Positions 172 through 13,179 of a stretch of 64,000 nt of DNA are shown here, in pieces. The position numbers and the translations under genes were made by a program. The notes under the pieces were generated by a model, which was not told where the DNA came from, searched no databases, and saw only the letters and a list, made by a program, of their open reading frames with translations. The DNA is taken from positions 62,001 through 126,000 of the IMG/VR virus record IMGVR_UViG_3300008259_005066; one strand, given 5' to 3'. Position 1 is the first letter of the stretch. Every line of letters begins with the position of its first letter.

Positions 172-1494
172 TTAGTTCTGTAGGTAGCCATGCTTGTCAA
201 GTATGTGGGCAAATTCTGGATACAACACACGAGCGTCAAATCCAAACACACGATCCCAGCGATCGAGATGCTGTACCAATGCTGACCAACGACGATCTCG
301 ATCATCAGGTTCTGGTAGATCCAATATCCGCAGTATTTGTAATATCTGATTTTTGGCCACCCTGCGGAAGTTGTTGGGGTCACTTTCGTTATAGTCAGAC
401 CACACATCGGCTTCATCCAGTGCATATCTTGTCAACAAATCAAGATATGGCAGTCGATACTGATCTCTTATGTTTTTGGGTACCACAGTGATATCAAGGA
501 AATCTGGATCTGTGCAGAGATTGCTTTTGATCAACAACCCCTTTTGCAAAGCCAACTCAATGACTTGCCAATAACTGCGCACTGTCAGCAATCCCGGTGC
601 TGGTCTCAAGGTCACTGTGATCGTGGTGCCATTGCACTCATTGATGTAATTCTCGATGTTGGCCAGCACCATGCTATTATCTGTGCCCTGGCGAGTGTAT
701 TCATTGAGCGTGTCCAGAGTTTCTATGCTGATCTCAAGACCCACCCTGGGGAACCGTTTGAGTTTTTCGATGATCTTTTTGTCAAAGGAAGTGCCATTGG
801 TCACGAAACTCATGCACACATCTGTGCGACCATGATCGATCAGGAAATCCACTAGATCATGGAACCGAGGTTGTATTATGGTCTCCCCGCCCATGAAATG
901 TATGTTCTTGAGTTTGGATATTGATACTAACTCCTCGCGGAATCTATTCCATACTTCTGGATCAGCGGTCCAATCCTGTGATACAGCACTGATCATGTTC
1001 CATTGACGATGTTGGCTGGCGATGCGGCTGGATGCTGACGGGTTACACATCTTGCAGGCGAGATTGCAGTAGTTGCCAAGATCAATGTGCAGATCGATTG
1101 GCATGCCATCATATGCACCTGCGTTGGATCGACTGTGTTCAAATTTTTCGAACCCAGGACTTTGCTGGTAACTTTCTGCAAAATTCTGCTTGGTGAATAT
1201 CACTGATTTCTGATTGCTACGATGCCGACGACTGGTGTCACTGACCTGTTCTTCGTGCCAGCATCTAGCACAATGATTCCATTGCTGATCCCCTAGCACT
1301 TGTAATCTAGCTTCACGCATGGGCACAGAATCATACCACTCCTTTATGGACATGTTCCTGATGTTGTATCGCTGTTTCAGCGATGTATCATAGGGAACAT
1401 TGGGAGTGGCATGACAGCAAAACGCCAAAGCGCCGTCCCAGTAGATATGTAATTCATACCACGGGCTGTTGCAGAATATTCTTTGATTAGACAT
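172..1494 (-). CDS. Radical SAM protein with N-terminal SPASM/twitch-like Cys domain
   Basis: CNLACKMC (CxxxCxxC), FMGGE, VTNG motifs; N-terminal C..PW..CC..CARC. Confidence 0.85.
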
Positions 1495-2077
1495 CTCGTT
1501 GGGTGATGATGCGATCAGCTAGGCCATACTCCACGGCCTGTTGTGCTGTCATCCAGTTGTCTCGATCCATATCTTTCTCCAGAGTCGCATAGTCTTTGCC
1601 GGTGTGCTGGACATAGAGTTCAGTCAAGGTCTTCTTCCAGCGCATGAGTTCTTTGTAACGGATCTCCACTTCAGTGACCTGTCCTTCAGCTCCACCCAGA
1701 GGTTGATGGATCATGTGCTGGCTGTGTGGCAGGATGAACCGCTTGCCAGCAGTGCCGGCGCAGGCCAGCATGGAGCCCATCGACGCGGCCAATCCACACA
1801 CTATGGTAGAAACATCACACTTGATGAACTGCATGGTATCATAGATGCTCATGCCCGCTGTGATTGACCCGCCTGGTGAGTTGATATAGAACAAGATGTC
1901 TCTGTCAGGATTTTCCGCTTCTAGGAACAGCATCTGCGCCACTATGAGGCTGGCTGAATGTGAGTTTACGTCTGTATCCAGCATGATGATGCGATCTCTC
2001 AGCAGGCGGCTGTAGATGTCATAACTGCGTTCTCCACGGCTAGTCTGTTCCAGCACGATAGGCACTAGATTGGGCAT
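1487..2077 (-). CDS. clpP: ATP-dependent Clp protease proteolytic subunit
   Basis: [19 protein letters not shown], catalytic triad AASMG / MIHQP / MDRD; SD AAGGAG. Confidence 0.97.
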
Positions 2078-2111
2078 TGTTTCTCCTTGTTGTAAGTAAG
2101 TATCCTAGATA

Positions 2112-2140
2112 AGTATAGCATACACTGAAAATATCTGCAA
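2112..2140 (-). promoter_or_regulatory. sigma70-type promoter for clpP
   Basis: TTGCAG-N17-TATACT with TG extension. Confidence 0.55.
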
Positions 2141-3696
2141 TGAGAAACCTAATCGATATCATAGAAAACCTAGAAGAATCACGTGGACTCAGCGCCAGGA
2201 ATCCCGGTGAGGAATTCGTGCGCACCGGGAGCAAAGAGCAAGACGATCTCATAGTGTTCCAGGGCCTGCAATTCTATCCCGAATCTGGTGCCTATGACAG
2301 TTCTGAAGAAATGATGCAGGTTTTTGACAAACTCAAGGCCAAACTAAAACCCGGTGTAGAGCCCATAAATCGCCCCACAGCCGGCACCAAAGCATTTGGC
2401 TTGGCCACTTTTGATACAGCAGTGGGCCGCAGATACCTGGTAAAATTTGCCAAAGAGATCAACCCAATACGGACCAAGAACACATTTTTCCAGACCGCAG
2501 ACATACCTGGAGAGTTTACCTACAAGACAGCACGTGGCGAAAAAGAAACTGTGGGTTACAAGCCCAGCCAAGTGCTCACGGAATTCCGGAGCCAAACACC
2601 AGAATCTATCTATCAACAGATCATGGCCAAGTTCGGAGAAGACAGCCCCATTGGTCAAGCCACTCGCATATTCTACCAAGCCACAGACTTTCCCATCATC
2701 GTGCCCGGCGAAGGCATTGATTTCAACGGATTCCGGGACTACTTCTGCGAGATGCTACAGCCCGTGGCCTTGATCCAGGGCAAACCCATCACAGGCAACG
2801 CTGGCAAAGCCGCCGAAGTGTTCTTGGGTGGAAATTATTCTGATTGCGTGGTATCGTTCAACGAAGGCGTGAGTGGTGGCCTGTTTGACAGTCTGTTGAT
2901 CGCTCCCAATGGCAAGCAGATCAAACTCAGTTCCAAAGGCGCCAAAGGCGCCATGGCATCAGTGATCAACTTGTTGAAGTCTGCCCGAGAACTGCGCGAT
3001 GCAGGCCTTGGAGACATAGTGGATCAATATCAATCAGTGATAGATATCTTGGAAACCATAGAACAAGGCAATCACTGGAGCGGACCCATTGAACTGGCCA
3101 CACAGTTGGGTATCATCGACGAAGCCGAAGCCGGTGCCATCATACCCACGCTCACGCCTTTGACCCAGTCTGTGGACATCCGCAAGGTCCAAGGATTGAC
3201 TGACAATCTACGCCAGATCTACAATGACAGAACCGTCAAAGATGCCAGCAAGGTGGTTCCTTTGGAGCACATGGTGGCCAGCCTGGCATACAAAGTCTGC
3301 AACGAGATCAACACAAGAACCAATTTCTCTGACGCGGCCGCAGACATCCTCAACAATTCGGCCTTTGTGCAGATGTATACTGAAGCTGCCAAGAAAGGCA
3401 CGGACATCATCATCAAGGGTTTCCGCACTGTGTGGCCCAGCAAATTGTTCACACAAGTGACCATAGAAGCAGAGAAGAGTTACAGTTCTACTTCAAGTTC
3501 GGGTGGCAAGTTGGTGTTCAACATCAACAAAGAACCCAAGGCCGTGGCCAACGCAGACACATCAGGCGGCACTGAACCCGGTAGCGATCAGGACATCGCC
3601 GATTATCAAGCGCCAAGATCCGACATCAAAGCGTCAGACACAGTGGCAGTGGGTGATGAACGAGGTCTAGGAAGAAAACGCCGCAAGAACTTCTAA
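2140..3696 (+). CDS. Hypothetical protein, possible PD-(D/E)XK-like fold, possibly virion-internal
   Basis: 518-aa ORF; LFDSLL...KLSSK pattern; N-terminal IIENLEE. Confidence 0.6.
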   Translation: MRNLIDIIENLEESRGLSARNPGEEFVRTGSKEQDDLIVFQGLQFYPESGAYDSSEEMMQVFDKLKAKLKPGVEPINRPTAGTKAFGLATFDTAVGRRYLVKFAKEINPIRTKNTFFQTADIPGEFTYKTARGEKETVGYKPSQVLTEFRSQTPESIYQQIMAKFGEDSPIGQATRIFYQATDFPIIVPGEGIDFNGFRDYFCEMLQPVALIQGKPITGNAGKAAEVFLGGNYSDCVVSFNEGVSGGLFDSLLIAPNGKQIKLSSKGAKGAMASVINLLKSARELRDAGLGDIVDQYQSVIDILETIEQGNHWSGPIELATQLGIIDEAEAGAIIPTLTPLTQSVDIRKVQGLTDNLRQIYNDRTVKDASKVVPLEHMVASLAYKVCNEINTRTNFSDAAADILNNSAFVQMYTEAAKKGTDIIIKGFRTVWPSKLFTQVTIEAEKSYSSTSSSGGKLVFNINKEPKAVANADTSGGTEPGSDQDIADYQAPRSDIKASDTVAVGDERGLGRKRRKNF

Positions 3697-4274
3697 CGGC
3701 TGACGTTGGCTATGTGATCACAGATGCCCAGTGCCAGTGCTTCCTCGGCGCTGAGCCAAACATCATTGGCAGGCAACAATTTGGTTTTGATGGTATCTTC
3801 ATCCAGCCCAGTGGTAGCACTGTAGTGATCGATCATCCGTTGTTGGGCCAATCCAAATTCCTTGGTTATAGCAAACAGTTCGTGATGCTTGCCATCACTG
3901 CCCCATGAATACTGGTGGCTGAGTATGGAAGTGTTGGGCGTGAGCACTCTGCGAGTTTTGGTGCCTGCCAGGAATATCAACAGACCACAACTGGCTATCT
4001 GACCCAGGCCCACGGTTTTGATGGGGATCGAACTGCTGTTCATGACATCGATCAGCGCAAAGGCCTCTTCCATGTCTCCGCCACGACTGCAGATCATCAG
4101 TATGAGTTCTTTTTTCTTTTTCTTGACTATGTAGTTTTCATGCAAGATCCACTCAATGATGGGCAACATGGACTCAGCGTCTACTTCACCCATAAAAGTG
4201 TAGATGCCACTTTTTTTGAGATCGTCACCTGGCGAGTATGCAACATCGTCTTTGTCTTGGATCATGGTCGACAT
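3693..4274 (-). CDS. Second, divergent ClpP-family protease
   Basis: ICSRGGD, IASCG (Ser), ILSHQ (His), NDVWLSAEEAL (Asp). Confidence 0.88.
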   Translation of the reverse strand: MSTMIQDKDDVAYSPGDDLKKSGIYTFMGEVDAESMLPIIEWILHENYIVKKKKKELILMICSRGGDMEEAFALIDVMNSSSIPIKTVGLGQIASCGLLIFLAGTKTRRVLTPNTSILSHQYSWGSDGKHHELFAITKEFGLAQQRMIDHYSATTGLDEDTIKTKLLPANDVWLSAEEALALGICDHIANVSR

Positions 4275-6369: not shown

Positions 6370-6645
6370 TTACTTGGTTTTGGTCTGGGATGTGTAGGCT
6401 TTCATGATACCCTCACCGAATTTGACATAGTCAAATTTAGCGGCTTCCTGGGCATGCTTGATGGTTTCTTGCACAACCGTGGTGCCAGCATCCAAAGTGG
6501 CCTTGGCGGCTTTTTTGGTATATTCGGATTGGTTGTCAATGAACTCATTCAATGCTGTGGCAATCTTTTCGTCAGTTACGAAAGTCTTGACAAATTGCTT
6601 CTTGCCGGTCTGGACTGCATCGATGGTCGCGTCTAATGTAAACAT
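6370..6645 (-). CDS. Phasin-like PHA granule-associated protein
   Basis: 91-aa amphipathic helical protein (IDAVQTGKKQFVKTFV...FIDNQSEYTKKAAK); SD AAGGAG; PhaR-like box upstream. Confidence 0.65.
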   Translation of the reverse strand: MFTLDATIDAVQTGKKQFVKTFVTDEKIATALNEFIDNQSEYTKKAAKATLDAGTTVVQETIKHAQEAAKFDYVKFGEGIMKAYTSQTKTK

Positions 6646-6804: not shown

Positions 6805-7185
6805 ATGGCTTGGACTGCTACACTCAACATCGTCAACAACACCCAATATAACCTAACCGTTAACCACAACACAGTGGGTGATTTAACTACTATCGCACCT
6901 GGTCAGTCATGGTCCTGGACCACATCTGATCCAAACAATACCAACGCCTTGCGTTTTTGGACAGTTCCGGAACAGTGGTATATGCAAGGTTCAGTGGCCT
7001 ATGGTCCCATGGCCGGAGTATACATGGACCGTGGCTGGATGGCACCCACGGATCAGACCATCCGCTTGGATGCCGATGTCAATGGCACAGGATTCTCACA
7101 GACCCAAAACGGTGGAGCCACTGTGGTGCCTTGGAACGGATTTGAATCCGGTGGCACGATCAATATGAAGTTTTCTAAGACTTGA
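6805..7185 (+). CDS. Hypothetical beta-rich protein
   Basis: SD GGAGG before ATG 6805; 126 aa, Thr/Asn/Trp-rich. Confidence 0.7.
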   Translation: MAWTATLNIVNNTQYNLTVNHNTVGDLTTIAPGQSWSWTTSDPNNTNALRFWTVPEQWYMQGSVAYGPMAGVYMDRGWMAPTDQTIRLDADVNGTGFSQTQNGGATVVPWNGFESGGTINMKFSKT

Positions 7186-7885
7186 TGTTGTAGGCCAAAC
7201 CAAATCGTTCTAGCCCTTTGATATAAGTCCATCCTAGATCCCATTCCCAGGGTTTTTGGCTGAGTTTAGGCGAAGCTGGATCAGCATGATGATTGTTGTG
7301 TAGTTCTTCACCACCGATGAAGAATGCCCAGGGCACAATATTAGTGGAATAGTCTTTGGTTTGAGTGTTCCTATAACCCCACCAGTGTCCCAGGCCGTTT
7401 ATGACGCCGGCTGCCCACAGTGGGATCCAAATCATCTGCCATAGCCAAGGCAACCAACCCCAGTCCCAGCCCCAAATCATGCAGTTGATAAAGAACATCA
7501 AGGTCACCCCCAACCAGTTGAATGGTGCATAGATGTGACGCTCTACCCAGTCATCGGGCGTGCCCACACCATACTGGTTGACCATGGCTTTGTCTTTTGC
7601 GGCCCAGGCATAGTAAAAAGCACCGCCTAATAAAATCTGCCAAATTCCTTCATTTTGCGGACTGTGCGGATCACCTTCCGCGTCAGTGAATCTGTGATGT
7701 TTTCTGTGTGTGGCCACCCACTGTTTGGTGACCATGCCTGTGGTGAGCCACAGCCAAAATCTCATGAAATGTGCCACACGTGGATCAAATGTCACACCTC
7801 TATGTGCCTGGCTACGATGCAAGTAAAGTGTGACACAAGCTATGGTGATGTGTGTCATCACCAGGATGTATATGAATAGGAGCAT
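7175..7885 (-). CDS. Delta-9-type fatty acid desaturase
   Basis: His boxes HRSQAH, HRKHH, HNNHH; TM segments; start taken at MLLFIY. Confidence 0.93.
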   Translation of the reverse strand: MLLFIYILVMTHITIACVTLYLHRSQAHRGVTFDPRVAHFMRFWLWLTTGMVTKQWVATHRKHHRFTDAEGDPHSPQNEGIWQILLGGAFYYAWAAKDKAMVNQYGVGTPDDWVERHIYAPFNWLGVTLMFFINCMIWGWDWGWLPWLWQMIWIPLWAAGVINGLGHWWGYRNTQTKDYSTNIVPWAFFIGGEELHNNHHADPASPKLSQKPWEWDLGWTYIKGLERFGLAYNIKS

Positions 7886-7889
7886 CAAA

Positions 7890-8504
7890 TTACTTATCCT
7901 TGATCCAGAAGCCCAATCTACTACCAGCAGGGCTGTGATACCACTGTGTACCGGGAGGCTGTTGTTGGCTGGATTCGGGCCATACAGGCCAGATCTCATC
8001 ACTATCATGATTGGCGAAATCATCATTGTATCGTAGATGCACTTCGATCACTGTATCGCCGATGTATTCTACGTTGATCCATTCCTGATAATACTTGAGA
8101 TCGTGCAACATCCCAGGAAAAGGCCGATCTAAATCCGTTCGACACCACCGTGAAAAACGATCCAATCTCCGAGGATCATCTCTGAAACCTTGCACCGTGA
8201 GATGCTGTTGGCCCCAATGGTAGTCCACTGACACATGCGGACCTTCGAGCACCTGGGTCCAGAAAAATCCATCGGGCACTGTGTCACTGTCACCTTTTTC
8301 CATCCACACGATCTGCGCACCTCGACTCATCATGCGGATGTTGGTGATAGGTCTTATCACATATTCTCCGGACCATGGTACGGGAATACCAGCCGGTCCA
8401 GCGGCGATGCCCTGTCTTCGTGCCACTATGAGTTTGTCATAGACCCACAACCACTGTGGTGGGCATGAGTCATACACGTCGCGATCGCTGACGAACTGCA
8501 TCAC
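7890..8504 (-). CDS. Hypothetical protein, ATP-grasp-like
   Basis: YDKL, VIRPITN, INVEY..VIEVHLR pattern. Confidence 0.55.
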   Translation of the reverse strand: MMQFVSDRDVYDSCPPQWLWVYDKLIVARRQGIAAGPAGIPVPWSGEYVIRPITNIRMMSRGAQIVWMEKGDSDTVPDGFFWTQVLEGPHVSVDYHWGQQHLTVQGFRDDPRRLDRFSRWCRTDLDRPFPGMLHDLKYYQEWINVEYIGDTVIEVHLRYNDDFANHDSDEIWPVWPESSQQQPPGTQWYHSPAGSRLGFWIKDK

Positions 8505-9130
8505 GCTCCCGAGGCCAACACTATCTTGCAGATATGTTCCAGCCGTTCTATGTGTTCAAACGCACGCCACGGTGAGGTATCGATAGCAACCACACCATGT
8601 CCACGGATGCCCACGATGTCAAAGGCGATGTTGCCTTGTTGATCTAATTGTAAATTTTCGTGGCAACGATCTGCCAGTTCTTGGCTTATAGGCGGCACAT
8701 CTCCCACATTGGGTGCTACCTTGGTATATCTACTGAGTTCTGGAAAGTCCGCAACAATGTCGCCTAAATTGATGCCACGGTGCATGGCCGCCACACAGTA
8801 TGTTGGATGCAAGTGAACTACCACACGCACCTCCGAGGCATGTTGTCCCATGCGTCGTTGCAGTCCAAAGTGCAAAGGAATCTCGCCGCTGGGTTTGAGA
8901 TTGGCGCTGATGTCAGTGTAATAATCTTCTCGCCAGAGAGACACTGGACCATTTTCAAGAATCATGATCTTCTTGAACTGGTCTGGTTGTAGGGTCTGCT
9001 TTCTCACTCCTGATGGTGTGATGTAGAAATGATCTCGATCATGATGCCGAATGCTGACGTTGCCGTCTCGACTGGTGATCCAGTTGCGGCGGTATGCCTC
9101 TACTAATGTTTCACATATGGTTTCTAACAT
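8501..9130 (-). CDS. Class II aldolase/adducin family protein
   Basis: DGNVS, ITPSG, PSGE..LH, HLH, GHG motifs. Confidence 0.9.
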   Translation of the reverse strand: MLETICETLVEAYRRNWITSRDGNVSIRHHDRDHFYITPSGVRKQTLQPDQFKKIMILENGPVSLWREDYYTDISANLKPSGEIPLHFGLQRRMGQHASEVRVVVHLHPTYCVAAMHRGINLGDIVADFPELSRYTKVAPNVGDVPPISQELADRCHENLQLDQQGNIAFDIVGIRGHGVVAIDTSPWRAFEHIERLEHICKIVLASGA

Positions 9131-9131
9131 T

Positions 9132-9326
9132 TTACCAGTGCCTTATGACATTTGCTATTATGAATCCGCAAGTGATCACATGGATCACTATCCAGAACGT
9201 TTTGAGGCAGAGTGCTACCCTTGCTTCTCTCATGGTCAAGATGGGCACTCTAGGGCGGTCTTCGTCAGTGTTGCCCATGACATGACCTGTGGCTCGAGCC
9301 CAGATGCGTTCAATGCTACGCATCAT
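9132..9326 (-). CDS. Small membrane protein
   Basis: C-terminal hydrophobic helix; translationally coupled to neighbours. Confidence 0.6.
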   Translation of the reverse strand: MMRSIERIWARATGHVMGNTDEDRPRVPILTMREARVALCLKTFWIVIHVITCGFIIANVIRHW

Positions 9327-9433
9327 TGCAGATTGATCCATATCGCAATGGCCAGACCTGCACACCATAATACCGAGATCACAGCGTATTTGATCTTTTT
9401 GCGTCGAGATACTCTAGACCAAGTGCTTGCCAT
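9323..9433 (-). CDS. 36-aa membrane peptide (not in ORF track)
   Basis: [36 protein letters not shown]; stop/start overlaps on both sides. Confidence 0.5.
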   Translation of the reverse strand: MASTWSRVSRRKKIKYAVISVLWCAGLAIAIWINLQ

Positions 9434-10710
9434 CAGTGGAACTGTTCTTCTTCTGTTGAGCCTTTGAGAGCCTGGGTGGAAGCATCAGCCTCCACTGTGG
9501 TAGTCACGCGGTCAAAGTAACTGGTTCCTACTTCTCTCTGATGTTTGACAGCTTCGAAACCACGGCTCGCATCCGCGAACTCACGCTCTTGTAACTCCAC
9601 GAAAGCAGACATGCCGTCCCTAGCATAGCCATGAGCAAGGTCAAACATGCCATGATTAAGAGCATGGAATCCAGCAAGTGTGATGAATTGAAAACGGTAA
9701 CCCATTGCTCCAAGTTCACGTTGGAAACGGCCAATTGTGTCTGCATCTAGGTTCTTCCTCCAGTTGAATGATGGTGAGCAGTTGTAGGCTAACATCTTGC
9801 CCGGAAACTGTCGGTGTATGGCTTCGGCGAATCGCTTGGCGAAGTCGAGGTCGGGTTTGCCTGTTTCGCACCATACGAGATCTGCGTAAGGACAGTAGGC
9901 CAGGGCTCTACTGACTGCTTGGTCGAATCCTGCTCGGGTCCGATAGAAACCCTCCACAGTTCTTTCACCAGTAAGAAAAGGAACGTCGTTAGGATCAATA
10001 TCTGAAGTGATAAGATCGCCGGCTTCGGCATCTGTTCTAGCAATAACAAGACTAGGCACTCCCATAACATCAGAAGCGAGACGAGCGGCAATAAGTTTAT
10101 TGATGGCTTCTCGTGTTGGAACAAGGACTTTTCCTCCCATGTGTCCGCATTTCTTTACGGACGCTAATTGATCTTCAAAATGCACACCTGCGGCCCCGGC
10201 TTCGATCATGGCCTTCATGAGTTCGAACGCATTGAGCACACCACCAAATCCTGCCTCTGCGTCAGCCACGATGGGTGCGAAAAAATCTCGATCTTCTTGG
10301 TCTTCCATCCAGGCGATCTGATCTGCTCTGGTAAAAGCATTGTTGATCCTACGCACCACTGCTGGCACAGAGTCTGCGGGATACAGGCTCTGATCAGGAT
10401 ACATGGCGCCAGCCAAGTTGGCATCAGCGGCCACTTGCCACCCACTCAAATATATAGCCTTCAAACCGGCCTTGACCTGTTGCAGGGCTTGCATGCCCGT
10501 GAGTGCTCCCAGGGTGTTGACATAATCTTGTTCATGTAGCAAACGCCACAATTTTTCGGCGCCACGCCGTGCCAGACTGTATTCTATGGGGTTGGAACCT
10601 TGCAAACGCACCACGTCCTCGGCTGAATAATCACGTTTGATTCCGGTCCAGCGCGGGTTTTCTGTCCATTCTTGTTGCAGTTTGTATACCTTCCATCTAC
10701 GGTCTTGCAT
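9433..10710 (-). CDS. aceA: Isocitrate lyase
   Basis: KKCGHM signature, [19 protein letters not shown]-terminal STEEEQF; SD AGGAGG before ATG 10710. Confidence 0.97.
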
Positions 10711-10746
10711 GGTGTTTCCTCCTGTTGAGCCAGGATATTTAGTTAC

Positions 10747-10759
10747 ATTGCAGTGCAAT
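10747..10759. promoter_or_regulatory. Palindromic operator, PhaR-box-like, between divergent aceA and the KKPAAK gene
   Basis: ATTGCAGTGCAAT perfect palindrome, same core as 6731-6743. Confidence 0.6.
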
Positions 10760-10817
10760 ATGCTAGGTTTCGATAATATGCTGTGTAAATACACTATATA
10801 AAACAAAGGAGACTGCA

Positions 10818-11051
10818 ATGCTCGCATTTTTAAAAAAGTTTTTTGGTTCCAAGCCCACCGTAAGTCCTTGCCCAGAGGCCCCTTACAAAGTTGAAGCACC
10901 ACAGACCACACCTGGTGTGATACCTATGTCCACACAATACTCCGAGGCTGCGGCGCCTAAGAAAAAACCGGCTGCCAAAAAACCTGCTGGGGAAAAGAAA
11001 CCTGCTGTCCGTGCCAAAGCAGTGAGAGCCAAGAAACCTGCTGCCAAATGA
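10818..11051 (+). CDS. Small protein with N-terminal amphipathic helix and histone H1-like KKPAAK tail
   Basis: [10 protein letters not shown]...[30 protein letters not shown]; SD AAGGAG. Confidence 0.8.
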
Positions 11052-11410
11052 GTTCCCACTGGGGTTATCATCTGATGTTGGATTGTAGTGGTTGTGATAT
11101 TGAATCTATATCCAACCGCGACAACATCTATAGATTCGTCAAGGATCTAGTGGATCGTATCGATATGACAGCACACGGAGAACCCGTGATCGAACATCTC
11201 CTGCCCGGAGACCCCAAACAGGGCTACAGCCTCATGCAGTTGATCACCACATCAAATATCTGTGGCCATTTCATGGAACTAGATGGCACGGCCTATTTTG
11301 ATGTGTTCAGTTGCAGAACTTTTGATATTGAAACTGCCAAGGCCGTGGTCGATGAATATTTCCATCCCAGAAAGATGCGTGTCAATTTCCTGACTAGACA
11401 CGCCGATTAG
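11048..11410 (+). CDS. speD: S-adenosylmethionine decarboxylase proenzyme family protein
   Basis: GYHLMLDCSGC, G.S...LITTSNICGHF, DVFSC. Confidence 0.8.
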   Translation: MSSHWGYHLMLDCSGCDIESISNRDNIYRFVKDLVDRIDMTAHGEPVIEHLLPGDPKQGYSLMQLITTSNICGHFMELDGTAYFDVFSCRTFDIETAKAVVDEYFHPRKMRVNFLTRHAD

Positions 11411-12188
11411 CGAAATAACTCCGCAAGTATCCTAGGCCTTTGTATTCGATCACAGCATCAGTCATGCTCATCACACTGCTGATGATCCTTTGTTTTTTAT
11501 CTGCGTCTTGGAACACATCCCGTAGTGGTATCATGTAGACTCTGATCAAAAACAGCGCGGCTTGACTGTGTATGGGTATAGTGGTCTGGCGTTCCGATCT
11601 GAACCACATGTCATCTATTGTCTCCGTGGACCATGCTTCTACACCACTGGGATGTCTGCTCAACGCAGGACGGTTGGCTATACTCCACACTGATCTTATG
11701 AAAGGACCCCGGGTAGTGATCATACGTGCGATGTGTCCAGATGCCTTGTTGACTATGTCAAAGTCTGGCACGGGTTCATGTATTTCAAGGAAAGTCTTGT
11801 TGACTTTGGTTTGAGGATCCCACCCCGATGGCAAGCACACACTCAGTATCTGTGCAGAGAGTTCGCCGGCACGATTGGGTGCCCATATCACAAAGTCTTC
11901 CTGTAGTGCCCGAGTTAGTTGCCACACAGGAGCATCTCCTTGGATCACAGGTGCAGTGGGATCATATTTTCTCAGTGCATCTACGGCTTGATAAACCAGT
12001 TCACGACTGGCTGAATCTCCATATACCGGATTGTAGTTGTTGAGTTTGGCGTCTTGATATCGATCAAAATCCCTGTCCGTGGTCAGTATGGACTCACCGG
12101 GTTGCCAAGGTCGCATGTGCGGCCGCATGGCATAGGGAACTTCTACATCAAAAGGGATATCACACAGTGACGTGCTTGGCGAAACCAT
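11394..12188 (-). CDS. DUF3445 / heme-dependent oxidative N-demethylase alpha-like protein
   Basis: LQEDFVI, CLPSGWDP..K, IHEPVP, RSERQT motifs; start uncertain. Confidence 0.75.
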   Translation of the reverse strand: MVSPSTSLCDIPFDVEVPYAMRPHMRPWQPGESILTTDRDFDRYQDAKLNNYNPVYGDSASRELVYQAVDALRKYDPTAPVIQGDAPVWQLTRALQEDFVIWAPNRAGELSAQILSVCLPSGWDPQTKVNKTFLEIHEPVPDFDIVNKASGHIARMITTRGPFIRSVWSIANRPALSRHPSGVEAWSTETIDDMWFRSERQTTIPIHSQAALFLIRVYMIPLRDVFQDADKKQRIISSVMSMTDAVIEYKGLGYLRSYFANRRV

Positions 12189-13179
12189 CTCTTGCTAGAT
12201 TTTTACCTTTGGCCTCGCACTGGATGTCAAACTGATCGGAGAAACCAGCGGCCCAGTCGTTCACAGCCGAATTCCAATAGAAATCCGAGTGGGCGCGGAG
12301 TTGCTGTTTTTTATGACCTCGTGCAAGAAGTCCAGCAAGATCTGGGCGAACTCGGGGATCATGATCAACAAGAATATCTTCGCGACTAACACTGTAATGC
12401 ATAGCAGGGCGAACGTCACGCCAAGACTCAACCACACGCTGAACACGATCATCTTGGGGATCGATGTATTCTCCTGTTTTGACCCAATGGTGATGAATGT
12501 CCAGCACAAGAGCCACGTTATCAGCCACAAGCAAAGTAAGGTCCAAACCATTTGATATCTCGTCGTTTTCGATAGTTATGAGATTGCGTGCCTCGGGGCT
12601 AAGTTTGCCCAGGCTACGCAAGAATTTTTCAGGCCCACCCTTGCCCGACAGGTGAACATTGATCTTGAAGCCATGATCATGCCAGGTGGCGCCATAGCCC
12701 ATCCAGCGGGCCATGTCTGCATGATATTCAAACTCTTGGATGCTACGTTCCACGATGCCGTCGTTCTCTGATGCTAACACACAGAACTGTCCAGGATGGA
12801 ATGAAAGTCTTACTCCCAACTCTCGGGCACGGGCACCCACAGGAGCAAAGATCTTTTCTAGGTGTCGTTGGATGTCTGCTTGTTGCCACCAGTCAATCCA
12901 GTTGGGTTCTGTGTAGCCTTGTAGCATTTCAGACCCCAGTCGAACCATGCGTAGATGATGAGGTAGACTGCCCACACGTTCTACCATGTTGAGAGCGGCC
13001 TGTGCATTGTGATTCATGATGTCCCACTGGCGCTGTTCTGCTTGGTCTGCATGCTCACGCAACCAACGCATGGTAGTGCTCCGCCCATTGAGTTCACGAT
13101 TCTTGGCATTGACTTTCATGCCAGCAGTTTCACTGGGATCGTCTAACCATTTACAACAAAAACCAATTCGAGCAGTCAT
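12160..13179 (-). CDS. uvsE: UV-damage endonuclease
   Basis: RIGFCCK, RLSFHPGQF, IENDE, LDIHHH, AHSD, EAKGK. Confidence 0.93.
   Translation of the reverse strand: MTARIGFCCKWLDDPSETAGMKVNAKNRELNGRSTTMRWLREHADQAEQRQWDIMNHNAQAALNMVERVGSLPHHLRMVRLGSEMLQGYTEPNWIDWWQQADIQRHLEKIFAPVGARARELGVRLSFHPGQFCVLASENDGIVERSIQEFEYHADMARWMGYGATWHDHGFKINVHLSGKGGPEKFLRSLGKLSPEARNLITIENDEISNGLDLTLLVADNVALVLDIHHHWVKTGEYIDPQDDRVQRVVESWRDVRPAMHYSVSREDILVDHDPRVRPDLAGLLARGHKKQQLRAHSDFYWNSAVNDWAAGFSDQFDIQCEAKGKNLARDGFAKHVTV

What the first reader, a model, noticed from the sequence alone, without database searches (positions are those of the whole stretch)
10818..11051. 77-aa possible mini PhaM/PhaF analogue
Seen: an amphipathic N-terminus ([10 protein letters not shown]), a Pro-rich linker and a KKPAAK-repeat tail; the gene shares the palindromic operator with aceA. 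Known: PhaF (Pseudomonas) and PhaM (Cupriavidus) tether PHA granules to DNA through a granule-binding N-terminus and Ala/Lys/Pro-rich tails. Inference: it tethers granules or membrane to phage or host DNA. It could instead be a generic histone-like protein.
Basis: inference. Interest (0 to 1): 0.6.

Follow-up and report, generated by a model that had tools for sequence, protein, structure and literature searches.

The report
Small late phage membrane/DNA-binding tail protein
The 77-residue gene is real and belongs to a large, unnamed family found only in uncultured freshwater jumbo phages: a late-expressed, mostly disordered protein with a MinD-like membrane-binding helix at one end and a histone-H1-like lysine tail at the other, and no detectable tie to PHA granules, phasins or aceA.

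Summary
The ORF at 10818..11051 (+) is a real gene. It has an N-terminal amphipathic helix, a Pro-rich disordered linker and a KKPA-repeat tail with net charge about +12.

It founds a virus-only family. A profile search found 676 clusters at 50% identity, all 50-134 aa. There is no Pfam or PHROG hit, no relative in 185,579 species-representative cellular genomes, and none in GenBank phages.

Family hallmarks:
- An N-terminus of the form M-[LI]-x-x-[LI]-K-K-[LF]-F-G, nearly the E. coli MinD membrane-targeting sequence.
- An invariant PYKVE motif at residues 22-26.
- A variable neutral-to-acidic linker.
- A K/A/P/R tail.

Expression signals point to an abundant late protein. 55 of 57 distinct loci carry a T4-type late-promoter core, TAAATA, within 60 nt upstream (about 1.2 expected), and all carry a Shine-Dalgarno site.

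The host genome is a T4-like jumbo phage with a Gp23 capsid and an S77 prohead protease. aceA and speD flank the gene only in this phage. The conserved neighbour elsewhere is UvdE. No phasin domain exists in the record. The "operator" palindrome is real, but it is neither unusual nor conserved.

Best reading (about 0.35): a bipartite tether of membrane helix plus polycationic DNA-binding tail, working on the Noc principle, with PYKVE docking an unknown partner. Rivals are a packaged internal polycation and a lysis accessory. The PhaM/PhaF analogy is not supported as family membership.

The parts
10736..10741 (-). TAAATA late-promoter-like box for the divergent aceA gene, 25 nt upstream of its ATG at 10710
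   Evidence: Read from the sequence. The motif is enriched upstream of genes across the genome.
10747..10759 (.).
   Evidence: Exact match. It is not enriched and not conserved in relatives.
10786..10791 (+). TAAATA box (T4-type late-promoter core, in the context TGTAAATA), 26 nt upstream of the ATG
   Evidence: In the genome, 49 genes carry the box within 50 nt upstream (2.6 expected), including tail-fibre and portal genes. 55 of 57 distinct family loci have it within 60 nt upstream (1.2 expected).
10806..10812 (+). Shine-Dalgarno site AAGGAGA, with 5 nt between it and the ATG
   Evidence: Only 11 of 272 genes in the genome have this perfect site, the major capsid gene among them. All 57 distinct family loci have an SD-like site.
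10818..11051 (+). 77-aa ORF (family 'FAM'); pI 10.3, net charge +12.5
10818..10847 (+). Residues 1-10: amphipathic helix resembling the MinD membrane-targeting sequence
   Evidence: AF2 predicts a helix at residues 2-9. The E. coli MinD C-terminus ends in GFLKRLFGG. Ten of 44 members give sub-threshold hits to PSM-epsilon.
10881..10895 (+). Residues 22-26: the PYKVE motif, whose function is unknown
   Evidence: P22, Y23, K24 and E26 are invariant and V25 nearly so in alignments A1 and A3. The motif is present in all 73 loci.
10956..11048 (+). Residues 47-77: K/A/P polycationic tail of the histone-H1 type, with four KKPA units
   Evidence: Composition and charge. Sub-threshold HC2 and Rv3852 hits in family members. 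The family-wide median charge of the C-terminal half is +9.9.
11048..11410 (+). AdoMet decarboxylase (speD); its start overlaps the FAM stop (ATGA). It is an accessory neighbour seen only in this phage.
   Evidence: PF02675, E 2.8e-19. It is absent next to FAM in other phages.

Best explanation
The gene encodes an abundant, late-expressed, intrinsically disordered adaptor of a freshwater T4-like jumbo phage.

Proposed mechanism:
- Its first roughly 10 residues form a short cationic amphipathic helix of the MinD, Noc or SepF kind. This helix lies on the cytoplasmic face of the inner membrane (inferred).
- Its C-terminal K/A/P tail (+12) binds DNA or another polyanion non-specifically, as histone-H1-like tails do (inferred).
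- Many copies bound along DNA would cluster the weak helices and pull the DNA to the membrane, which is the principle shown for Noc.
- The invariant PYKVE motif, and a second semi-conserved linker motif, are short linear docking sites for a partner that is still unknown (inferred).

Shown here: the architecture, its family-wide conservation, its restriction to viruses, and the late-promoter and strong ribosome-binding signals.

Not shown: membrane binding, DNA binding, and the partner.
For: - The ORF is real and has homologues: 273 clusters at 90% identity, and 676 clusters at 50% identity, all 50-134 aa with no fusions.
- M1, F9, P22, Y23, K24 and E26 are invariant.
- AF2 predicts a helix only at residues 2-9; the rest is coil.
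- The family N-terminal consensus FLKKLFG matches the MinD membrane-targeting sequence FLKRLFG, read from E. coli minD.
- Ten of 44 members give sub-threshold hits to amphipathic PSM-epsilon peptides.
- The Noc precedent shows a weak N-terminal amphipathic helix activated by clustering on DNA (PMC4331003).
- The tail is 35% K, 29% A and 16% P with net charge +12, and gives sub-threshold HC2 and Rv3852 hits.
- Late-gene signal: TAAATA lies upstream in 55 of 57 loci against 1.2 expected. The same box precedes tail-fibre and portal genes in this genome.
- Strong SD: the site is shared with only 10 other genes, including the capsid gene.
Against: - No experiment or RNA data are available.
- The hydrophobic moment of the helix is only modest.
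- Strict invariance of M1, F9 and PYKVE suggests protein recognition rather than simple lipid or DNA binding.
- A late role for tethering DNA to the membrane is not obvious.
- The MinD similarity is a 7-residue motif found by recall, not a statistical search.
- The polybasic tail could bind anionic lipid instead of DNA.
Confidence: 0.35

Rival explanations
1. It is a packaged internal head protein acting as a DNA counter-ion, comparable to T4 IPI-III. The N-terminal module would target it to the prohead core, it might be trimmed after PYKVE, and the lysine tail would neutralise packaged DNA.
For: - The phage has a T4-type head module: Gp23 capsid protein, S77 protease, a scaffold and a very acidic 287-aa core-like protein.
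- The gene has a late promoter and the strongest class of SD site.
- In T4, internal-protein lysines and polyamines balance the DNA charge (PMC3012670).
- In this phage the gene is translationally coupled to speD, a polyamine-synthesis gene.
Against: - The inferred capsid propeptide site in this clade is an invariant L-x-E. PYKVE has K at P3, and no conserved L/I-x-E exists in the family.
- The N-terminus resembles a membrane-targeting sequence, not the acidic T4 capsid-targeting sequence.
- There are no fusions to other cargo.
- The family is absent from five isolates with related capsids, PA5oct among them.
- speD adjacency is unique to this phage.
- The protease-substrate complex test gave no answer.
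Confidence: 0.2
2. It is a lysis accessory: a cationic, membrane-active peptide that helps disrupt a membrane at the end of infection, comparable to the disruptin gp28 of phage phiKT.
For: - It is small, has net charge +12, carries an amphipathic N-terminus and is expressed late.
- In 6 of 73 loci it lies directly downstream of a 408-aa protein with a GH19 domain that matches an endolysin PHROG.
- Disruptins are cationic peptides under 80 aa (bioRxiv 10.1101/515445).
- Members give sub-threshold hits to PSM-epsilon, an amphipathic peptide family.
Against: - Only 9 residues are helical. The Pro-rich tail is not amphipathic, unlike gp28 or LL-37.
- In most loci the gene sits in an auxiliary-metabolism island next to UvdE.
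- The GH19 endolysin of this genome lies 57 kb away.
- The invariant PYKVE motif is not explained by this role.
Confidence: 0.12
3. It is a PhaM/PhaF-like tether between PHA granules and DNA.
For: - The bipartite shape matches: an amphipathic head and an AKP-type tail.
- A conserved 91-aa all-helical ORF lies 4 kb upstream in the closest relatives.
Against: - No phasin domain in the protein or in family members.
- No Phasin or Phasin_2 match in the phage record.
- The 91-aa ORF has no phasin hit by Pfam, source names or fold.
- aceA is adjacent only in this phage.
- A 9-residue helix is far shorter than a phasin domain.
- The host and its PHA status are unknown.
Confidence: 0.05
4. It is a generic nucleoid-associated or histone-like protein with no membrane role. 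The N-terminus and PYKVE would be protein-docking motifs, for example for a replication, transcription or packaging factor.
For: - The composition resembles an H1-like tail.
- The short invariant linear motifs are typical of docking sites in disordered proteins.
Against: - The N-terminal motif matches membrane-targeting sequences best.
- No partner was identified.
- No homology to HU, IHF, H-NS or Hc1/Hc2 reaches threshold.
Confidence: 0.15

Closest known systems
MinD C-terminal membrane-targeting sequence, and the N-terminal amphipathic helices of Noc, SepF and MreB
   Same: - It is a terminal cationic amphipathic helix of about 10 residues.
- The family consensus FLKKLFG is close to the E. 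coli MinD sequence FLKRLFG.
- Noc combines such a helix with DNA binding to bring DNA to the membrane (PMC4331003).
   Different: - There is no ATPase or ParB-like domain.
- DNA binding, if any, would come from a disordered polybasic tail.
- The helix is N-terminal, whereas in MinD it is C-terminal.
- Membrane binding is untested.
- The SepF and MreB comparison rests on my own knowledge, not on a tool result.
PhaF (Pseudomonas) and PhaM (Cupriavidus/Ralstonia)
   Same: An Ala/Lys/Pro-rich tail of the kind that binds DNA is joined to a hydrophobic-surface-binding N-terminus. This description of PhaF and PhaM is from established knowledge.
   Different: - No phasin domain and no PhaM-like region.
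- It is 77 aa, against roughly 260 aa for those proteins.
- There is no pha gene context.
- The family is found only in viruses.
Histone H1-like bacterial proteins (Chlamydia Hc2, PF07382; Rv3852 family)
   Same: The K/A/P low-complexity tail gives sub-threshold profile hits in a few members.
   Different: - Scores are 18-20 bits against a 40-bit cut-off.
- Those families lack the conserved N-terminal helix and the PYKVE motif.
T4 internal proteins IPI-III, with their capsid-targeting sequence
   Same: They are also small, lysine-rich, late proteins of a T4-type phage, with a conserved roughly 10-residue N-terminal module (PMC3012670).
   Different: - There is no L/I-x-E protease site.
- The N-terminus is basic and resembles a membrane-targeting sequence.
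- There is a single copy per genome and no cargo diversity.
phiKT gp28 'disruptin'
   Same: It is also a small cationic phage peptide with an amphipathic element, made late.
   Different: gp28 is predicted to be mostly alpha-helical. This protein is about 88% disordered and Pro-rich.

Membership tests
PhaF (phasin with histone-like tail) | N-terminal phasin domain (Pfam Phasin PF05597 or Phasin_2 PF09361) | tested here: not met
   No Pfam hit for the protein at E<=0.01. No phasin family appeared among the hits of 44 members at E<=1.
PhaF (phasin with histone-like tail) | C-terminal AAKP-type Ala/Lys/Pro repeats | tested here: met
   Four KKPA units; the tail is 35% K, 29% A and 16% P.
PhaF / PhaM | Genomic association with pha genes or phasins | tested here: not met
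   No Phasin or Phasin_2 match in the 209.5-kb record. The conserved neighbours are UvdE and auxiliary metabolic genes. The record is only about 60% complete.
PhaM | Sequence homology to PhaM, and activation of PhaC | tested here: inconclusive
   No PhaM-named model appeared among the NCBIfam hits of 44 members. I did not verify that the library holds a PhaM model. PhaC activation cannot be tested here.
PhaF / PhaM | Binding to PHA granules | not testable with these tools
   Needs localisation experiments in PHB-positive and PHB-negative cells.
MinD/Noc-type membrane-targeting amphipathic helix (a functional class, not a homology family) | A short helix at the extreme terminus, with a hydrophobic face flanked by basic residues | tested here: met
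   AF2 helix at residues 2-9. Positions 2, 5, 8 and 9 are conserved hydrophobic and positions 6-7 are K. Six of 7 residues are identical to the MinD sequence. The hydrophobic moment alone is not significant.
MinD/Noc-type membrane-targeting amphipathic helix | Actual membrane binding that is sensitive to membrane potential | not testable with these tools
   Needs microscopy or liposome assays.
T4 internal proteins (capsid-targeting sequence) | An N-terminal targeting peptide ending in an L/I-x-E prohead-protease site | tested here: not met
   The capsid protein of this clade keeps an invariant L-x-E. The only universal Glu motif in the family is K-V-E.
T4 internal proteins (capsid-targeting sequence) | Presence in the virion | not testable with these tools
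   No isolate carries the gene.
Histone H1-like Hc2 (PF07382) | A score above the Pfam gathering threshold | tested here: not met
   The best score is 20.2 bits against a 40-bit cut-off, in 3 of 44 members.
Disruptin (phiKT gp28-like) | A small cationic peptide dominated by amphipathic helix | tested here: not met
   It is cationic (+12.5), but only residues 2-9 are helical.
Disruptin (phiKT gp28-like) | Location in a lysis cassette | tested here: inconclusive
   It lies next to a GH19 lysin-domain gene in 6 of 73 loci, but not in the window or in most loci.

The most novel reading that the evidence does not exclude
This is a previously undescribed, virus-only family of late, abundant, disordered proteins. 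It joins a MinD-like membrane-targeting helix to a histone-H1-like polycation through an invariant PYKVE docking motif. It would be a phage-encoded, Noc-like DNA-to-membrane tether acting during virion assembly, packaging or lysis in freshwater jumbo phages. If instead the protein is packaged, it would be a new class of internal DNA counter-ion.
Probability: 0.3. Interest if true: 0.65.

Novelty: new variant of a known kind. Interest (0 to 1): 0.45.

Why it matters
The family is widespread: 676 clusters at 50% identity, and near-identical DNA of this region occurs in lake metagenomes from at least 17 studies. It is conserved in a clade of uncultured jumbo phages of roughly 330-345 kb, and it is probably highly expressed late. 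It still has no Pfam, PHROG or literature description.

If the MinD-like helix and the H1-like tail work as proposed, this would be a minimal viral solution for coupling DNA, or another polyanion, to the membrane. It would also be a compact two-module tag of possible use in synthetic biology.

The result also corrects a tempting over-reading. The aceA, speD and 'phasin' neighbourhood is an accessory island, not a functional PHA module.

Tried and rejected
- Searches of GenBank phages: tblastn with the window protein and two divergent members found no match.
- Search of five related isolates: the profile search of PA5oct, Phosso, Vibrio 2.275.O, fHe-Yen9-04 and AD1 found nothing.
- Scan of 185,579 species-representative cellular genomes: no relative.
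- PDB profile search: only a chance histone H2B tail, E 2.3.
- ESM Atlas: only unnamed viral clusters.
- Tandem Repeats Finder: no DNA repeat in the tail.
- Sequencing runs: only DNA contigs from freshwater and lake samples, with no RNA.
- Complex prediction on the prohead protease plus residues 1-45: no answer, which is not evidence either way.
- DUF6620: one member gave a sub-threshold N-terminal hit (E 0.0067). I could not follow it up, and it is not in this genome.
- A multi-member family sharing the N-terminal module, which a capsid-targeting sequence would predict: a six-frame motif scan found only this one gene.
- Operator hypothesis for the palindrome: rejected as not enriched and not conserved.
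- The 91-aa ORF as a phasin: no Pfam hit, no name from any source, and no fold match (best Foldseek E 1.5).

Full report
**Observation**

The window holds an ATG ORF at 10818..11051 (+) of 77 aa. Its stop overlaps the start of a 120-aa AdoMet decarboxylase gene (ATGA; PF02675, E 2.8e-19). Isocitrate lyase (aceA, 9433..10710, minus strand; PF00463, E 1.8e-107) diverges upstream.

The protein has pI 10.3 and net charge +12.5, and divides into three parts:
- Residues 1-26 are mildly basic.
- Residues 27-46 are slightly acidic and rich in A, P and T.
- Residues 47-77 are 35% K, 29% A and 16% P, with net charge +12 and four KKPA units.

AlphaFold2, run with a 44-sequence alignment, predicts a single helix at residues 2-9 (pLDDT about 79) and coil elsewhere (pLDDT 59-66). 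The amphipathic moment of the helix is modest by itself (0.40; 21% of shuffles reach it).

**The 'operator'**

ATTGCAGTGCAAT sits at 10747-10759. Three results count against an operator role:
- Palindromes with 6-nt arms occur 305 times in the genome, against about 205 expected.
- The pattern, allowing 2 mismatches, is not enriched in the window: 4 matches found against 3.8 expected.
- The upstream regions of three relatives do not keep it.

The intergenic region does hold two back-to-back TAAATA boxes. One lies on the minus strand 25 nt before the aceA start (10736-10741). The other lies on the plus strand 26 nt before this gene (10786-10791), followed by a perfect AAGGAGA ribosome-binding site.

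**What genome this is**

The window is part of a 209,518-bp IMG/VR virus record estimated to be 60% complete. The record encodes a T4-type major capsid protein (PF07068, E 2.9e-100) and an S77 prohead protease (PF03420, E 3.2e-28), together with a scaffold and a very acidic 287-aa protein.

By capsid protein, the closest isolates are Pseudomonas phage PA5oct, Sinorhizobium phage Phosso, Vibrio phage 2.275.O and Yersinia phage fHe-Yen9-04, at 63-67% identity. Relatives that carry the gene lie on contigs of 316-345 kb. Near-identical DNA of this region is found in freshwater and lake metagenomes from at least 17 studies. No RNA run holds it.

**A T4-like late promoter**

TAAATA occurs only 90 times on both strands of the genome. 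Yet 49 of 272 called genes have it within 50 nt upstream, against 2.6 expected. These include the large tail-fibre-like genes and the portal region.

Across 57 distinct family loci from IMG/VR, 55 have TAAATA within 60 nt upstream of the gene, against 1.2 expected. The box usually lies 16-30 nt from the ATG. All 57 have a Shine-Dalgarno site.

In this genome only 11 genes have the perfect AAGGAGA site, the capsid gene among them. This gene is the only one that combines that site with a late box. I infer an abundant late protein. This inference rests on motifs, not on RNA.

**The family**

The word-based search gave 273 clusters at E<=1, all unnamed metagenomic proteins of 56-114 aa. The exhaustive profile search gave 676 representatives at 50% identity with E<=1e-3. 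The best 150 were all 50-134 aa and matched end to end, with no fusion to other domains.

Alignments A1 and A3 show invariant M1, F9, P22, Y23, K24 and E26, and near-invariant K6 and V25. The architecture is constant across 73 loci:
1. M-[LIF]-x-x-[LIF]-K-[KS]-[LFI]-F-G.
2. A spacer of 8-10 residues.
3. (A/V)PYKVE(A/T)P.
4. A linker of variable length, neutral to acidic and rich in A, V, P, T and E. It often carries a second motif resembling AEQATQAVVESIAP.
5. A K/A/P/R tail. The median net charge of the C-terminal half is +9.9.

Two sub-lineages carry a Cys-rich insertion in the linker (L024, L071).

The family has no Pfam or PHROG hit. It has no relative in one genome for each of 185,579 prokaryote species. 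It is absent from GenBank phages and from five related isolates searched with the profile. ESM Atlas neighbours are all viral and unnamed.

**Context**

In 58 of 73 loci the gene is followed convergently by UvdE, sometimes with a small ORF in between. Upstream lie auxiliary metabolic genes: Fe/Mn superoxide dismutase, IscA, IscU, QueD, a glycosyltransferase and a fatty-acid desaturase.

aceA, speD and the HODM-like gene flank it only in L008-L010, which are copies of the window's own phage. Any functional link to aceA is therefore not conserved.

A second context group of six loci places the gene directly downstream of a 408-aa protein with a GH19 domain that matches an endolysin PHROG. In that group it lies upstream of a 271-aa gene, a 515-aa gene, and CsgF, CsgG and curlin-repeat genes. 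The GH19 endolysin of this genome is 57 kb away and has its own late box.

**Testing the PHA idea**

- Neither Phasin_2 nor Phasin matches anywhere in the record.
- No family member hits a phasin model.
It is a conserved three-helix protein with 892 homologues, all named hypothetical.
- That ORF has no Pfam phasin hit, no sequence match in the PDB and no fold match (best Foldseek E 1.5).

The PhaM/PhaF analogy is therefore left with the tail composition alone.

**What the N-terminus looks like**

The C-terminus of E. coli MinD, read from the genome, ends in GFLKRLFGG. The FLKRLFG part of it is identical at six of seven positions to the family consensus FLKKLFG. From established knowledge, this stretch of MinD is its membrane-targeting amphipathic helix.

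Noc uses an N-terminal helix of the same kind. That helix binds membrane only weakly until many copies are clustered on DNA, which brings the DNA to the membrane (PMC4331003).

Ten of 44 family members also give sub-threshold hits to PSM-epsilon, an amphipathic peptide family of staphylococci. The tails hit Hc2, Rv3852 and the low-complexity regions of TonB and ValRS, all below threshold.

These results point to function by analogy. They do not show homology.

**Testing the internal-protein idea**

T4 internal proteins carry a 10-residue capsid-targeting sequence. Their lysines, together with polyamines, balance the charge of the packaged DNA (PMC3012670). From established knowledge, that targeting sequence is removed at an L/I-x-E site.

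For the idea:
- Late, strong expression fits.
- The polycationic tail fits.
- The speD coupling in this phage fits.

Against it:
- The capsid propeptide junction in this clade keeps an invariant L-x-E, while the only universal Glu motif in the family is K-V-E.
- There is one such gene per genome.
- There is no cargo diversity.

A complex prediction of the protease with residues 1-45 returned no answer, which counts neither way.

**Verdict**

The feature is real and conserved.

My ranking of the explanations is:
- About 0.35: a late membrane-helix plus polycation tether, with a PYKVE docking site for an unknown partner.
- 0.20: a packaged internal counter-ion.
- 0.15: a histone-like protein with no membrane role.
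- 0.12: a lysis accessory.
- 0.05: a PHA-granule tether.

It is a new, unnamed phage family assembled from known kinds of modules. Interest is moderate.

Noticed in passing
window 7175-13179: An island of auxiliary genes surrounds the finding: fatty-acid desaturase, class II aldolase, isocitrate lyase, AdoMet decarboxylase, a HODM-like protein and the UvdE endonuclease. aceA has its own TAAATA box and an AGGAGG ribosome-binding site. Relatives carry different cargo at the same place (SOD, IscA, IscU, QueD, a glycosyltransferase, an acetyltransferase).
   Followed up: partly
window 6373-6645 (-): A conserved 91-aa ORF with a perfect AAGGAGA ribosome-binding site. It has 892 homologues, all named hypothetical. 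AF2 predicts three helices (pLDDT 81). It has no Pfam, PDB or fold match.
   Followed up: yes
G000 C1, whole record (window = C1:62001-126000): TAAATA behaves as a T4-type late-promoter core. There are 90 copies in 209.5 kb, and 49 genes have one within 50 nt upstream. Nearly all genes lie on the minus strand, with scattered single plus-strand genes that often have their own box.
   Followed up: partly
L013, L050 and L052 (for example L052:8628-13149): Related phage contigs carry a curli-type secretion set (CsgF, CsgG and proteins with curlin-like repeats), plus TctABC-like transporter genes, next to the family gene. This is unusual cargo for a phage.
   Followed up: no
G000 C1:191140-192003 (-) = L006:2005-2868: An extremely acidic 287-aa Asp/Glu-rich protein with a late box lies between the portal region and the prohead protease. 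It is a possible prohead-core component and a conceivable electrostatic partner for polycations.
   Followed up: no
window 1487-4274: Two ClpP-like protease genes on the minus strand flank a conserved 518-aa plus-strand gene of unknown function. The same 515-aa family follows the finding's family in the second context group.
   Followed up: no
L024:8001-8363 and L071:4565-4915: Family variants of 117-121 aa carry a Cys-rich insertion in the linker, CGCGRS...G.CVGLHKL..EEW.AHPDN. It may be a small metal-binding module.
   Followed up: no
window 10746-10754 and 10812-10820: A 9-nt inverted repeat, CATTGCAGT / ACTGCAATG, has its second arm over the start codon of the gene. The first arm lies upstream of the late box, so it would probably not be in the late transcript. 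It is likely chance.
   Followed up: no
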